NCBI GenBank assembly: GCA_001600695.1
Contig: BCKQ01000010.1
Location: forward strand, 116,604-125,244
DNA length: 8,641 nucleotides
Direction of reading: 5' to 3'
DNA from: Ascoidea asiatica JCM 7603
Taxonomy: Eukaryota; Fungi; Ascomycota
Each line of letters starts with the position of its first letter. The first letter of the stretch is position 1. Shown here piece after piece: positions 1,039 through 8,641 of this stretch. Both the position numbers and the translations under genes were made by a program. The notes below the pieces were generated by a model. That model had not been told where the DNA came from, did no database searches, and saw only the letters and a program-made list of their open reading frames with translations.

Positions 1039-3996
1039 CTATATCCAGGCATCTAACTCTTCGATCCTGTATTCATCCTCTTTGAAAGAAGGATAGTAAG
1101 GAACCATTGCATTTTCACTTTGTATATAACAATTATTGTACATTTTCCAATATGAACTCCTTACTTTCCTTGCAGCATGGAATAATCCAGCTAATATATA
1201 ATTCAAAATAACTCCACACCCAACTGCATTTCTCACCCCATCAATTGCATCCATTATTCTATCTATTACTTGTGGTGATGTTTCGTAAATATTAGGAAAC
1301 AATAAATTAAGAAAGTGTATGAAGGCATCTTCAAAGCCAAGACCTATACATCCTAAAGCCATATGTTTAACAACACTGGCAGATGTTTGTCTATGAACTT
1401 GATCTCTATCAGTTAATGCGTTCTCTAATAAAGGAAGAACTGCGTAAATATAGTCCTTAGTCATAGGACCTATATATTCAAACATGAAAGTCATTGCCTT
1501 CAAAACACCATTTTGAACATTATTATCTGGAGTTCTATACTCATTCATCAATGCCGGCAATACGGTGAAAGGTTCACAAGTTTCTGCAATAATACCGATT
1601 GCAACAGCAGTACATACTCTTGATTGACGTTCTTGAACCTTTAAATTATTTAGTAAAGTAGATAATACTTCCTGAGGTCCTATTGCTTTGGCTATATATC
1701 CAAACGTCTTGTTTGCTGCTTTTCTGATGGATTTTCTATGTGCTTTCAACATATCAACCAATTCAAAACAAATTCTCATCCACTCTTTTGAAGGTACATA
1801 TTCTGGAGCTCTATCTGCTATTCTTCCAATCAATTCTATTGCATTTTCTTGAACCTTTTCGTGTCTATTTCTTAGAATAGGAGTTAGATTGGGTAATAAT
1901 TGTTCTATTGGTGGATTCATTGAAACTAAACCCACGACAGCAACAATGTTTTTCAAGGTACGTAAAATTGACCCAAGAACCTCAGGAAAAACTTCACCTA
2001 AAGATTCATATAAAACCTTACTAAGCTTATACATTATTTCGTCTTCACCACAATTTTTGATAGAGTTTGAGACTGTTGAAACAAGATCTGCAGCTTGTTG
2101 ACGAACTTGAGGGTCATTGTTTTTGAGTCTATAAAGAACAATAGACACGATGTTGGGTATATAGGGCTTTACTCTTATATCTAACGAATTCACAACAGTT
2201 TCAAATGCAGTTAGTACCGATTGATCGTCATTTGATAATTGTAGTTCAAATGCCACAAGCATTCCATCTATTAGTCTCTTAACAACTCTATCTGACAAAT
2301 CTGCTGTTCCTAGACTTGAAACCATAATATCAATTGTTTGAACTGCCATCTTCCTGAATGGTTCAGATTCATCTTTCAATATATTCAATAACCCTTCCAC
2401 AATTTCACTTACTCCTACTTTTTTAGCAAGTGCATTTGTGGTTTCAACAACTAATTTATTATTTTTATTGTCAAGAGACAATTTTCTAATCCAGAAATAT
2501 TTCAAAAAAGGTGGTAAAACCTTATCACGTAAATATCGTGGTTGTACTCCATCGGTTGTTGAACACTGCTGAATAACCTTAAGGATTGTCCTTTTCATTT
2601 CTTCGTCGGGAGAATCAAATTCTCTTAAAATTATCACCATTATTTCACCTGTATAATAATTTGCATATTCTGGATCCATCAAAGGTATTAAATAACCAAT
2701 GCATCTTAAAAATGCTGACAAGCTACCGCCTCTTTGTCGTCTCATTCCCGTCCACAAAGGTTCTAAAACATTTTCGAAAGATTCGATTCCATAAGGAGCT
2801 GAAGCCTCTGCTAATGCAGCCAAAGCCAAAGCTGTATTTCTTCGTATACTGACATTTTCATCTTCCAAGCCCTTATAAATTGCTTCGACCAACTCACCTA
2901 AATGGGGTAAGATTCCACATCCAAAAAGTACTGCAATTTGCTGTACTATTTTAACACCAGTTAATCTGGCTTGACTGCTTTTTCTTGATCTACAAACAGC
3001 ATGAAGAAAAGGTAGTAACGATTGAATACCTAAAGCACTTGAAATAACGGCAAAAGTTCTTGCAGTCATATTTCTTATATATTCATCTGTTGTTTCAACG
3101 TCTGGTCGCAAAGTAGAGATCATTTCTGCTAAACCAGCAGCTCTAGATAGATTCGAAATAATTTCACGAGCCTCCATTCTGGCTACATAGTCTTCTTCCA
3201 TTAAAAACGGACATATTACTCTTAATATCTGATGTGTATAAGGCCTTATTAAATCTCCCAATTTATATAAAACTCTATCAACAATTTTAACAAGCAAATG
3301 TCTTTCCTGTTCATCAAACTTTTTTTCCATTAGTAGGGGTAATATTTGTTCAAATAAAACTCTGGGACCAAAGTTTCTAGCATTATCTGTTAAGGTTCTT
3401 AATGAAGCCTTTCTCACAGGGGGTGTTCCATTTTTTATTTTTAAAAGTAATCTCATAACTTTTCTTTCTTTAACTTCATAAATTGTTAGCGTTTTATTAC
3501 CTTCGAATTTAGATTCATCTTTTGTTCTTAACAATTTAGAGAAATATTTGGCATCTTCTGGCTTGAAGAACTGTAAGTTTTTAATTCCAGGAATTTCTGT
3601 TAGTAGTGCTTCCTTTAGTTTTTCAGTATATTCTTCTTTTAAATCGGGAACAGAATAAATGCCTGTAAGATTTTTTTCATCATCATTTTGTTGATCAGTA
3701 TTAAAGGTTATACTAGTTTTATTATTAGAAGAAACCTGAACAGGAACCAAGGCCATCATTGGCTCTTCAGGTATAAATCTGGAATTTCTTTCACTATCAG
3801 CATCCTTATCATTATCCCATTTCGATTTTTTGATTATTTTATTTATAAATTCACTGGCTGTTTTTTGAGTAGTTTCATCTATTTTTTTTTTCTTTTCTTC
3901 TAGAATTTCAGATTCATTTGGAAATTGCCACCTTCGTTTCCTAATCTTTTCTCTCGGTACTAATCTTGGGGGTGTTTTATCTCCTTCTTCTAACAT
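1039..3996 (-). CDS. HSH155: U2 snRNP SF3b subunit 1 (SF3B1/Hsh155/SAP155), HEAT-repeat protein, 985 aa
   Basis: Signature segments [108 protein letters not shown]. The short N-terminal domain has ULM-like RKRRW and KSKWD motifs. Uninterrupted ORF. Confidence 0.98.
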
Positions 3997-6548: not shown

Positions 6549-7589
6549 ATGAGTGGAAAAAGTAGTATTGTTTTATTGAATAGATTGTTATCATTAAAAG
6601 AATCTAGTCAATCATTATATTTAATAATTGATTCATTTAAGCAATCATCGAATTATTTAATCAAAGAAATAATTGATGAAAGAATCAATAAAAATGAAAT
6701 TCAAATAATATACTTATCATTTGAAACTATAGTTCAACCAGAATGGGCAAATGAGTTCATTGATTGTATAGATTTACCAATAAGTCAGATAATTTTACAA
6801 ACACAAAATATAATTAAAAAGAAATATGCAAAAAGTAATATTGAGAATACTAATGCTGAAAATAATAACAATATTAATAAAAATAATAATAATAATAGTA
6901 ATAATGGTGGAAATTATATTGGAAATAAAAATAAAAAATTACTAATATTTATTGATTCAATGAATTATATTAAAAATATAGAAGTAAATGAATTCATTTC
7001 AAATTTATATATTCAGAATAATATAATTCTCTTTACAATTTTTCATTTGAATATACCCGAAATTTTATCAAAAAATAATTATCCAACAACACTAAATTTT
7101 TTAAAAATTATTTCAACATCAATATTTGAAATCAGCTCATTAAATTTTAATTTCAATTATAATTATAACTCAAATTTTGAATATGAATTAATTGAAGATG
7201 ATTTAAATAAAAAATTTAAATTTTATTCAAGAAATTTATTCAATAACTCTAAATTTAAGCTAGAATTAGTTCTAAAAAGAAAAAGTGGTAGAGAAATTAT
7301 TTATAATTATATAATTGATAATAAAGATCATTCGATAATGATTGATATTGATAAAGAAAAAGAAAATAATGGAAATAATGAAAGTAATGAAAGTAAAGAA
7401 GATGAAATATTAAAGAATTTAACAACATTTAAATTAAGTATGAATGAAAAAGAAAAAGAAGCTAAATCAAAAGTTGAATTACCATTCTTAGAAGCTCAAA
7501 GAGATATCACTGCAGGAGGGGCAATTGTATATGAGTTTGAAAAAGATGATGATTATGATGAAGAAGATCCATATGAAGATCCATTTTAA
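6549..7589 (+). CDS. IKI1: Elongator complex subunit Elp5 (Iki1/Hap2), 346 aa
   Basis: N-terminal LLNRLLSLKE, IIYLSFET, IDSMNY, RKSGR, LTTFKL, VELPFLEAQ and the diagnostic C-terminus GGAIVYEFEKDDDYDEEDPYEDPF. Good start context AAAAATG. Confidence 0.93.
   Translation: MSGKSSIVLLNRLLSLKESSQSLYLIIDSFKQSSNYLIKEIIDERINKNEIQIIYLSFETIVQPEWANEFIDCIDLPISQIILQTQNIIKKKYAKSNIENTNAENNNNINKNNNNNSNNGGNYIGNKNKKLLIFIDSMNYIKNIEVNEFISNLYIQNNIILFTIFHLNIPEILSKNNYPTTLNFLKIISTSIFEISSLNFNFNYNYNSNFEYELIEDDLNKKFKFYSRNLFNNSKFKLELVLKRKSGREIIYNYIIDNKDHSIMIDIDKEKENNGNNESNESKEDEILKNLTTFKLSMNEKEKEAKSKVELPFLEAQRDITAGGAIVYEFEKDDDYDEEDPYEDPF
6861..6905 (+). repeat. Imperfect (AAT)n microsatellite encoding an Asn-rich insertion in Elp5
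   Basis: aataataacaatattaataaaaataataataataatagtaataat, read as NNNNINKNNNNNSNN. Confidence 0.85.
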
Positions 7590-7970: not shown

Positions 7971-8641
7971 ATGATTTCTAAGGATAAGATTTTAATTGTT
8001 GGTAGAAGGAAATCAGGTAAGATTCGATTATTAAAAAAAATATTAAGAAAAAATTTCATTGAAGATTTAACTAATGAAACTGATGGTCATTGTGGATTAA
8101 TTTATAAACATAATATTATCAATAAGTATTATCGTAAGGATATTGAAATTTGGATTGATGAATTTAAGGAAGTTGAAGAAGAAGATTTATGGGTTAAAGA
8201 ATTTTTAAATTTTGAATATAAAGAAATTCGAGATGTTATTAATGGTATAGTTTATTGTATTGATTTAAACAATTTAAAAGAGAATGAAATCATCAGGGAA
8301 ATTAATTTAATCAATGATAGGTTAAAGATTATCAAAAAAGAATTTGAAAAAGATCAAATAATCAATAAACATTTTTTAAATTATGAAGAAGAATTTAGTA
8401 GTAATATTGAAGATTATGATAATATTAGTGATTATAATAATAGTATTGATAATTATAATAATATTATTCTTGAAAACTATAATAAAAATATCAATAATAT
8501 TAATGAAGAATTTGCAATTTGGGAAGGATTTATGTTGGTTGTTGGATTAATGGAAGAAGAAAATATTGAAAAAAATACATCAATAGTTGAAGATATTTTA
8601 TGTTTAAATAATATTGAGTTTATTCCAATCAATTGTAACAA
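7971..8641 (+). CDS. IRC6: Irc6/p34 (AAGAB-like) adaptin-binding clathrin accessory factor with N-terminal G-protein-like fold; 3'-truncated
   Basis: Manual translation has no stop to the window end: MISKDKILIVGRRKSGKIRLL...GHCGLIY...NKYY..DIEIWIDEF...W.KEF...EIRDVINGIVY...WEGFMLVVG. The P-loop-like GxxxSGK, HxGLI, KYY, IDE and WxGF.xVVG blocks match yeast Irc6 as recalled. Start context AAAAATG. An in-frame upstream ATG lies at 7938. Confidence 0.85.
   Translation, partial: MISKDKILIVGRRKSGKIRLLKKILRKNFIEDLTNETDGHCGLIYKHNIINKYYRKDIEIWIDEFKEVEEEDLWVKEFLNFEYKEIRDVINGIVYCIDLNNLKENEIIREINLINDRLKIIKKEFEKDQIINKHFLNYEEEFSSNIEDYDNISDYNNSIDNYNNIILENYNKNINNINEEFAIWEGFMLVVGLMEEENIEKNTSIVEDILCLNNIEFIPINCN

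What the first reader, a model, noticed from the sequence alone, without database searches (positions are those of the whole stretch)
2719..2976. SF3B1/Hsh155 naturally substituted at a cluster of human cancer-hotspot positions
Seen in sequence: HEAT 4-7 reads [21 protein letters not shown] and RRQRGGSL. Recalled human SF3B1 reads KSWQARHTGIK, DEQQKVRTIS and RQHRGKGL. With a constant offset of 317 this gives W658->S341 (2974-2976), H662->L345 (2962-2964), K700->S383 (2848-2850), I704->N387 (2836-2838), K741->G424 (2725-2727) and G742->S425. Equivalents of E622, R625, N626, K666, G740 and D781 are intact. Established: these positions are recurrently mutated in MDS/CLL and line the surface contacted by Prp5/DDX46, SUGP1 and intron RNA. 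W658, H662 and K741 are retained in S. cerevisiae (W327, H331, K410), where substitutions alter use of non-consensus branch sites. K700 and G742 already differ in S. cerevisiae, so those two are less informative. TGG->AGT and CAY->TTA need 2-3 base changes, so sequencing error or editing is unlikely. Inference: this lineage has remodelled or lost a branch-site proofreading interface, possibly with co-evolution of Prp5/Cus2 or unusual intron branch points. It would be a natural model of the disease alleles.
Basis: partly seen in the sequence, partly recalled or inferred. Interest (0 to 1): 0.8.

Follow-up and report, generated by a model that had tools for sequence, protein, structure and literature searches.

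The report
Ascoidea Hsh155 with rebuilt cancer-hotspot groove
An Ascoidea yeast's only copy of the core splicing protein SF3B1 naturally carries two exact human leukaemia substitutions and loses three more groove residues, but it has gained a new positive charge beside them and its partner protein and introns look ordinary, so the surface seems rebuilt rather than broken.

Summary
Observation confirmed. The ORF at 1039-3996 (-) is the single HSH155/SF3B1 gene of an Ascoidea yeast, almost certainly A. asiatica. All six substitutions sit at the stated coordinates. W658S and H662L are the only two radical changes among 277 near-invariant columns. H662L and I704N are exact alleles reported in CLL patients.

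The changes are a stepwise lineage trait. A sister, Saccharomycopsis-like protein already has K700Q and K741N plus a new T703K. A. rubescens adds H662L and I704N. W658S is private to this species.

Loss of proofreading is not supported. Prp5 keeps an acidic-loop motif and a DPLD-like motif, and the DPLD docking site on Hsh155 is intact. R625 and K666 are intact, U2 is canonical, and a small intron sample shows ordinary branch points. No SUGP1 was found, which weakens the disease-model idea. A few other long-branch yeasts also replaced W658/H662. No paper describing this was found. No read-level check was possible. Verdict: real, modestly novel and testable.

The parts
1039..3996 (-). HSH155/SF3B1 gene, 985 aa, intronless, single copy
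   Evidence: synteny with A. rubescens
3925..3942 (-). ULM-like motif 1 (RKRRWQ, aa 19-24), the usual Cus2/Mud2 UHM docking motif, retained
   Evidence: role from general knowledge
3814..3831 (-). ULM-like motif 2 (KKSKWD, aa 56-61), retained
3220..3222 (-). V576R; basic in both Ascoidea and the sister protein; on an outer A helix, role unclear
3067..3084 (-). inner helix carrying E622, R625, N626 (intact) and T627M (changed)
2980..2982 (-). K656 equivalent (K339), contact for the Prp5 DPLD motif, intact
2974..2976 (-). W658S (S341); private to this species, A. rubescens keeps W
2962..2964 (-). H662L (L345); shared with A. rubescens; exact allele of a CLL patient
2950..2952 (-). K666 equivalent (K349), intact
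2848..2850 (-). K700S (S383); also common in Phaffomycetales; P in S. cerevisiae
2839..2841 (-).
2836..2838 (-). I704N (N387); shared with A. rubescens; exact allele of a CLL patient, possibly weak
2722..2730 (-). G740 intact, K741G (G424), G742S (S425); A. rubescens has P/C, the sister protein N/T
2599..2607 (-). D781 and E783 equivalents, intact

Best explanation
This is an ordinary, essential Hsh155 whose RNA-path groove (the inner helices starting at E622, W658, Q699 and G740) was rebuilt in steps with compensation. Shown from sequences and tree: the sister protein has lost K700 and K741 and has a basic residue at 703; both Ascoidea add H662L and I704N; this species adds W658S. Shown: residue 703 lies in the same helical register as N626 and H662, one repeat over, and R625, K666, D781, E783 and the DPLD docking site are intact. 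Inferred: R703 reaches into the space vacated by H662 and K700 and takes over their contact with the Prp5 acidic-loop aspartates and with intron phosphates downstream of the branch site. Prp5 would still dock and proofread, with at most a modest shift in stringency. Absence of SUGP1, whose predicted contacts are H662, K700 and K741, plausibly removed one constraint first.
For: Tree: ((window, A. rubescens) 100/99, sister P0162) 94/95. Residue states. R or K at 703 occurs in only 1 of 200 other word-search homologues (the sister) and 5 of about 150 distant representatives. Helix register (AF2 pLDDT 92.9; helices start at the four predicted positions). The Prp5 acidic-loop motif and DPFE are retained. 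I610, F647, V651, K656 and D894 are intact (contacts). U2 branch-pairing region is canonical. Branch points seen: TACTAAC, TATTAAC, AACTAAC, TTCTAAC, TACTAAT and a few xxCTGAC, with no -1/-2 transversions, the class that hsh155 MDS alleles affect most (PMC5416834). One SURP-containing ORF only, with no G-patch in it.
Against: No side-chain geometry or complex model could be computed, so the R703 contact is inferred from register alone. The order of events rests on one unnamed sister protein. Prp5 itself is atypical: DPFE is unique among 56 homologues, S replaces the usual D/E at the 202 equivalent, and the register of the loop is assigned by motif only. Another yeast (P0369) lost W658 and H662 without a basic 703, so compensation is not obligatory. 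The intron sample is about a dozen de novo calls without RNA data.
Confidence: 0.5

Rival explanations
1. Relaxed constraint and drift. With no SUGP1 and mostly near-consensus branch sites, these side chains are nearly neutral; T703R is incidental.
For: S. cerevisiae strains carrying only MDS alleles are viable, grow normally and splice consensus introns normally (PMC5416834). The protein differs from consensus at 79 of 466 well-conserved columns, and by total changes the hotspot excess is weak (p about 0.06-0.07). Other long-branch yeasts (P0369, P0379, P0396) replaced W658 and H662.
Against: Radical changes concentrate in this groove. Yeasts with similar overall divergence (Pachysolen, the sister P0162) keep W658 and H662. 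S. cerevisiae lacks SUGP1 (own knowledge) yet keeps H331 and K410. H662L and I704N are fixed in both Ascoidea species.
Confidence: 0.3
2. One reading: branch-site proofreading has been lost or retuned and co-evolved with Prp5 and unusual introns.
For: Three of the eight published acidic-loop contacts that are otherwise conserved are changed, including K741, which makes three H-bonds. DPLD mutations relax fidelity in yeast (PMC5238730), and this Prp5 has DPFE. Unselected branch points look more degenerate than the S. cerevisiae consensus. Unchecked first-stage notes report odd branch points in this genome.
Against: Prp5 anchors and their docking sites are retained, U2 is canonical, and RES (Bud13) is present. 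The variants seen are wobble or distal changes of the kind reported in intron-richer yeasts (PMC3879985). Branch-to-3' distances are about 11-50 nt.
Confidence: 0.18
3. Assembly error, mistranslation or a decaying paralogue.
For: W658S could not be checked on reads.
Against: The changes are shared with an independently sequenced species. The gene is single copy, syntenic, has an intact branch-A pocket and no CTG codons. Three runs hold all sampled words.
Confidence: 0.02

Closest known systems
Human SF3B1 and its MDS/CLL hotspot alleles
   Same: Same HEAT scaffold. H662L (PMC9458487) and I704N (PMC11610591) are exact patient alleles; K741 and W658 are mutated sites in patients.
   Different: Fixed in the only gene copy rather than heterozygous and somatic. 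No charge-reversal allele (K700E, G742D, K666E); R625 and K666 intact; R703 gained; no SUGP1 found.
S. cerevisiae Hsh155 (PDB 5gm6) and engineered hsh155 MDS alleles (PMC5238730, PMC5416834)
   Same: Short N-terminus with ULMs, no SF3b1 p14-binding Pfam hit, K700 and G742 naturally replaced, yeast-type N at V1078.
   Different: S. cerevisiae keeps H331 and K410 and has I at the 703 position. H331L, K410G, W327S and I372R were not found among the alleles in the passages I read.
Ascoidea rubescens Hsh155 (P0008) and sister protein P0162 (Saccharomycopsis-like, unnamed)
   Same: Basic 703 and 576, loss of K700 and K741; A. rubescens also has H662L, V701I and I704N and the same gene order.
   Different: Both keep W658; P0162 keeps H662 and has M704.
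Other divergent Hsh155 proteins (P0369, P0379, P0396 yeast-like; P0372, P0393 other eukaryotes)
   Same: W658 and/or H662 replaced independently.
   Different: Branches several times longer (1.1-3.0 against about 0.25 changes per site), with changes spread over the protein and no basic 703 in P0369.

Membership tests
SF3B1/Hsh155 orthologues | Full-length HEAT-repeat homology to SF3B1/Hsh155 | tested here: met
   phmmer E=0 to human and yeast chains over residues 139-975; AF2 helical repeats for aa 250-520
SF3B1/Hsh155 orthologues | Single-copy orthologue with conserved gene order | tested here: met
   one match in the genome; PKC1-HSH155-GPI16-IKI1 as in A. rubescens
SF3B1/Hsh155 orthologues | Branch-adenosine pocket residues (K1067, K1071, R1074, Q1104, R1106, F1153, Y1157) | tested here: met
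   numbering by offset to a mammalian sequence, pocket list from own knowledge
SF3B1/Hsh155 orthologues | N-terminal ULM motifs | tested here: met
   two motifs at aa 19-24 and 56-61
SF3B1 cancer-hotspot alleles | Substitution identical to a patient allele | tested here: met
   H662L and I704N only; no report found for W658S, K700S, K741G or G742S
SF3B1 cancer-hotspot alleles | Mis-splicing through lost SUGP1 binding | tested here: not met
   no separate SURP plus G-patch gene found in the genome
SF3B1 cancer-hotspot alleles | Altered Prp5/DDX46 binding | not testable with these tools
   needs pull-down or two-hybrid; Prp5 motifs are retained
SF3B1 cancer-hotspot alleles | Changed use of branch sites with -2, -1 or +1 substitutions | tested here: inconclusive
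   about a dozen unselected de novo introns and a motif-excess survey show no -1/-2 transversions; no RNA data

The most novel reading that the evidence does not exclude
Ascoidea Hsh155 is a natural multi-hit hotspot protein made tolerable by an intragenic suppressor: a basic residue at 703 replaces H662 and K700 in binding the Prp5 acidic loop and intron RNA. T703R might then suppress the Prp5-dependent effects of H662 or K741 alleles in yeast or human SF3B1, and would separate Prp5/RNA contacts from SUGP1 contacts in the same groove.
Probability: 0.25. Interest if true: 0.7.

Novelty: new variant of a known kind. Interest (0 to 1): 0.45.

Why it matters
How HEAT 4-7 mutations change branch-site choice from a distance (through Prp5/DDX46, intron RNA, SUGP1 or conformation) is still debated. 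A lineage that fixed H662L, I704N and loss of K741, apparently after gaining a basic residue at 703, offers a ready series of alleles in a known order. It can be tested with existing yeast reporters. If R703 suppresses, it identifies charge on that helix column as the functional requirement. If not, it shows these supposedly invariant residues are dispensable in SUGP1-less yeasts, which is useful but ordinary.

Tried and rejected
Second HSH155 copy: none. CUG mistranslation: no CTG codons in the gene, and A. rubescens L662 is TTG. Compensating change in U2 snRNA: none, the branch-pairing region is canonical. Loss of Prp5 anchors: rejected at motif level. SUGP1 orthologue: not found. V576R as part of the RNA path: rejected, it lies on an outer helix. 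Genome-wide pattern counting of branch points: too much background (44 hits against 66 control). Cus2, Mud2 and U2AF1 were not inspected. A. rubescens Prp5 was not among the named hits. The ESM Atlas added nothing. Literature searches found no paper on Ascoidea Hsh155 or on natural variation at these residues, but the library is incomplete.

Full report
Identity. The window holds the 3' part of PKC1, HSH155 (1039-3996, minus strand, 985 aa), GPI16 and IKI1. The ORF matches human SF3B1 and S. cerevisiae Hsh155 with E=0 and is the only match in the genome. The assembly has 20.3 Mb in 71 contigs, the same figures as Ascoidea asiatica JCM7603 in PMC5499181. The order PKC1-HSH155-GPI16-IKI1 is the same in A. 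rubescens, and the two proteins are sisters (100/99). The species name is therefore an inference, but a strong one.

Observation. All six substitutions and all six intact residues are at the coordinates given. The offset of 317 was checked against PDB chains and a mammalian sequence. No CTG codon is involved. Among 201 homologues W658 is kept in 200, H662 in 199 and K/R741 in 199; G742 and I704 vary, and K700S is frequent in Phaffomycetales. Among about 150 representatives at 50% identity, W658 and H662 are nearly always kept at this level of divergence and are lost mainly in sequences under 50% identical to a conserved reference. The protein is fairly divergent overall (79 of 466 well-conserved columns differ), so by simple count the hotspot excess is weak (p about 0.07). 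Radical changes, however, concentrate there: of 277 columns at least 98% conserved only two carry one, W658S and H662L. With only published PRP5 contacts p is 0.015-0.02. The test is post hoc and the reference set is poor in budding yeasts.

Artefact. H662L, K700S, V701I and I704N are shared with A. rubescens, with different codons at three of them, so they are real. W658S is private. I worked beside those places and sent none of their letters to a search tool afterwards.

History. An unnamed sister protein, P0162, groups with the two Ascoidea (94/95). It has no CTG in 1041 codons, as expected for the CUG-Ser2 clade, so it is probably a Saccharomycopsis (inference). It has V576K, K700Q, T703K and K741N but keeps W658 and H662. 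Both Ascoidea have R703, H662L and I704N; K741 is G here and P in A. rubescens. The simplest order is: K700 and K741 lost and a basic 703 gained; then H662L and I704N; then W658S. This order rests on one sister sequence.

Anatomy. AlphaFold (pLDDT 92.9) starts four successive inner helices at the equivalents of E622, W658, Q699 and G740. In that register N626, H662, T703 and A744 form one column, and T627, T663, I704 and A745 the next. T703R therefore places a long basic side chain next to the position where H662 became Leu, one turn from the lost K700. A basic 703 is otherwise rare. That it contacts Prp5 or RNA is inferred; I could not read side-chain geometry from the model.

Partners. In the human 17S U2 snRNP the PRP5 acidic loop fills the RNA path: K741 makes three backbone H-bonds, D203 binds H662, R625 and K666, and Q699/K700 and D781/E783 flank. 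The DPLD helix binds K656, I610, F647 and V651 (bioRxiv 2022.11.07.515429). The Prp5 of this genome (1101 aa) has KRKFVFNSDDD at about aa 185-195, matching the fungal motif KRxLxFGDEE, and DPFE where the 55 homologues with both motifs have DPLD or DELD. The D203 and D205 equivalents are kept; the 202 equivalent is Ser. I610, F647, V651, K656 and D894 are intact in Hsh155. U2 is a compact 190-nt RNA with a canonical branch-pairing region. Bud13 is present. The only SURP-containing ORF has two SURPs and no G-patch, so it is Prp21-like and no SUGP1 was found. H662, K700 and K741 are the residues predicted to bind the SUGP1 C-terminus (PMC10760632). That fits relaxation after SUGP1 loss, but it cannot be sufficient because S. 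cerevisiae keeps H331 and K410. Cus2, Mud2 and U2AF1 were not inspected; both ULM-like motifs of Hsh155 are present.

Introns. A gene model without a branch-point term gave about a dozen plausible introns not selected for TACTAAC. Their branch sites were TACTAAC, AACTAAC, TATTAAC, TTCTAAC and TACTAAT, about 11-50 nt from the 3' end. A survey downstream of GTAWGT showed excess over control for TACTAAC (mostly by selection), TATTAAC, AACTAAC and xxCTGAC, and none for other cores. These are distal or wobble variants. The -1 transversions that hsh155 MDS alleles affect most (PMC5416834) were not seen among these calls. The sample is small, biased and has no RNA support.

Disease comparison. H662L was reported in a CLL case (PMC9458487) and I704N in a CLL patient, where the authors suspected a weak effect (PMC11610591). 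W658C is listed in systemic mastocytosis (PMC9139197). The effect at K741 depends on the new residue (PMC7960499), and H331R and H331D act in opposite directions in yeast, so the direction of H662L or K741G cannot be predicted. Yeast strains with only such alleles grow normally, so viability here is not surprising in itself.

Uniqueness. P0369 (groups loosely with Pachysolen; W658R, H662Q, K700S), P0396 and P0379 are other yeast-like proteins that replaced W658 and H662, on much longer branches. The positions are thus not freely variable, but the loss has recurred. Ascoidea stands out because the change is focused on a fairly short branch.

Verdict. A real lineage-specific rebuilding of the SF3B1 hotspot groove, for which I found no published description. 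Compensated remodelling 0.5, drift 0.3, lost or retuned proofreading 0.18, artefact 0.02. New variant of a known kind; interest 0.45.

Noticed in passing
L005:1518-4823 (-), Prp5, aa about 185-320: DPLD motif reads DPFE, unique among 56 homologues; the acidic loop and this motif are about 120 aa apart, separated by Asn-rich sequence.
   Followed up: partly
L002:1501-1690 (+): Compact 190-nt U2 snRNA, unlike the long S. cerevisiae U2; the stem I loop lacks one U; branch-pairing region canonical.
   Followed up: partly
P0162 / L030:4367-7492 (+): The Saccharomycopsis-like Hsh155 naturally carries K741N, an exact CLL allele (yeast K410N), together with K700Q, T703K and Y623T.
   Followed up: partly
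P0369 / L026:10001-13438 (+): An unnamed yeast Hsh155 with W658R, H662Q (a common patient allele), K700S and G740S, arisen independently of Ascoidea.
   Followed up: partly
window 1711-1713 (-), aa 762: The V1078 equivalent is Asn, as in most budding yeasts sampled; from own knowledge this is linked to pladienolide B resistance in S. cerevisiae.
   Followed up: no
window 7971-8641 (+): ORF running off the window end, resembling IRC6 by eye; no Pfam hit.
   Followed up: partly
window 6840-6930 (+): Asn-rich low-complexity insertion inside IKI1/ELP5.
   Followed up: no
G000 C2:2501807, C10:603705, C18:124290, C18:264683, C18:304192, C20:153007: A repeated 43-nt element that looks like a 5' splice site plus branch point occurs at several loci, one near a contig end; probably part of a repeat family.
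   Followed up: no
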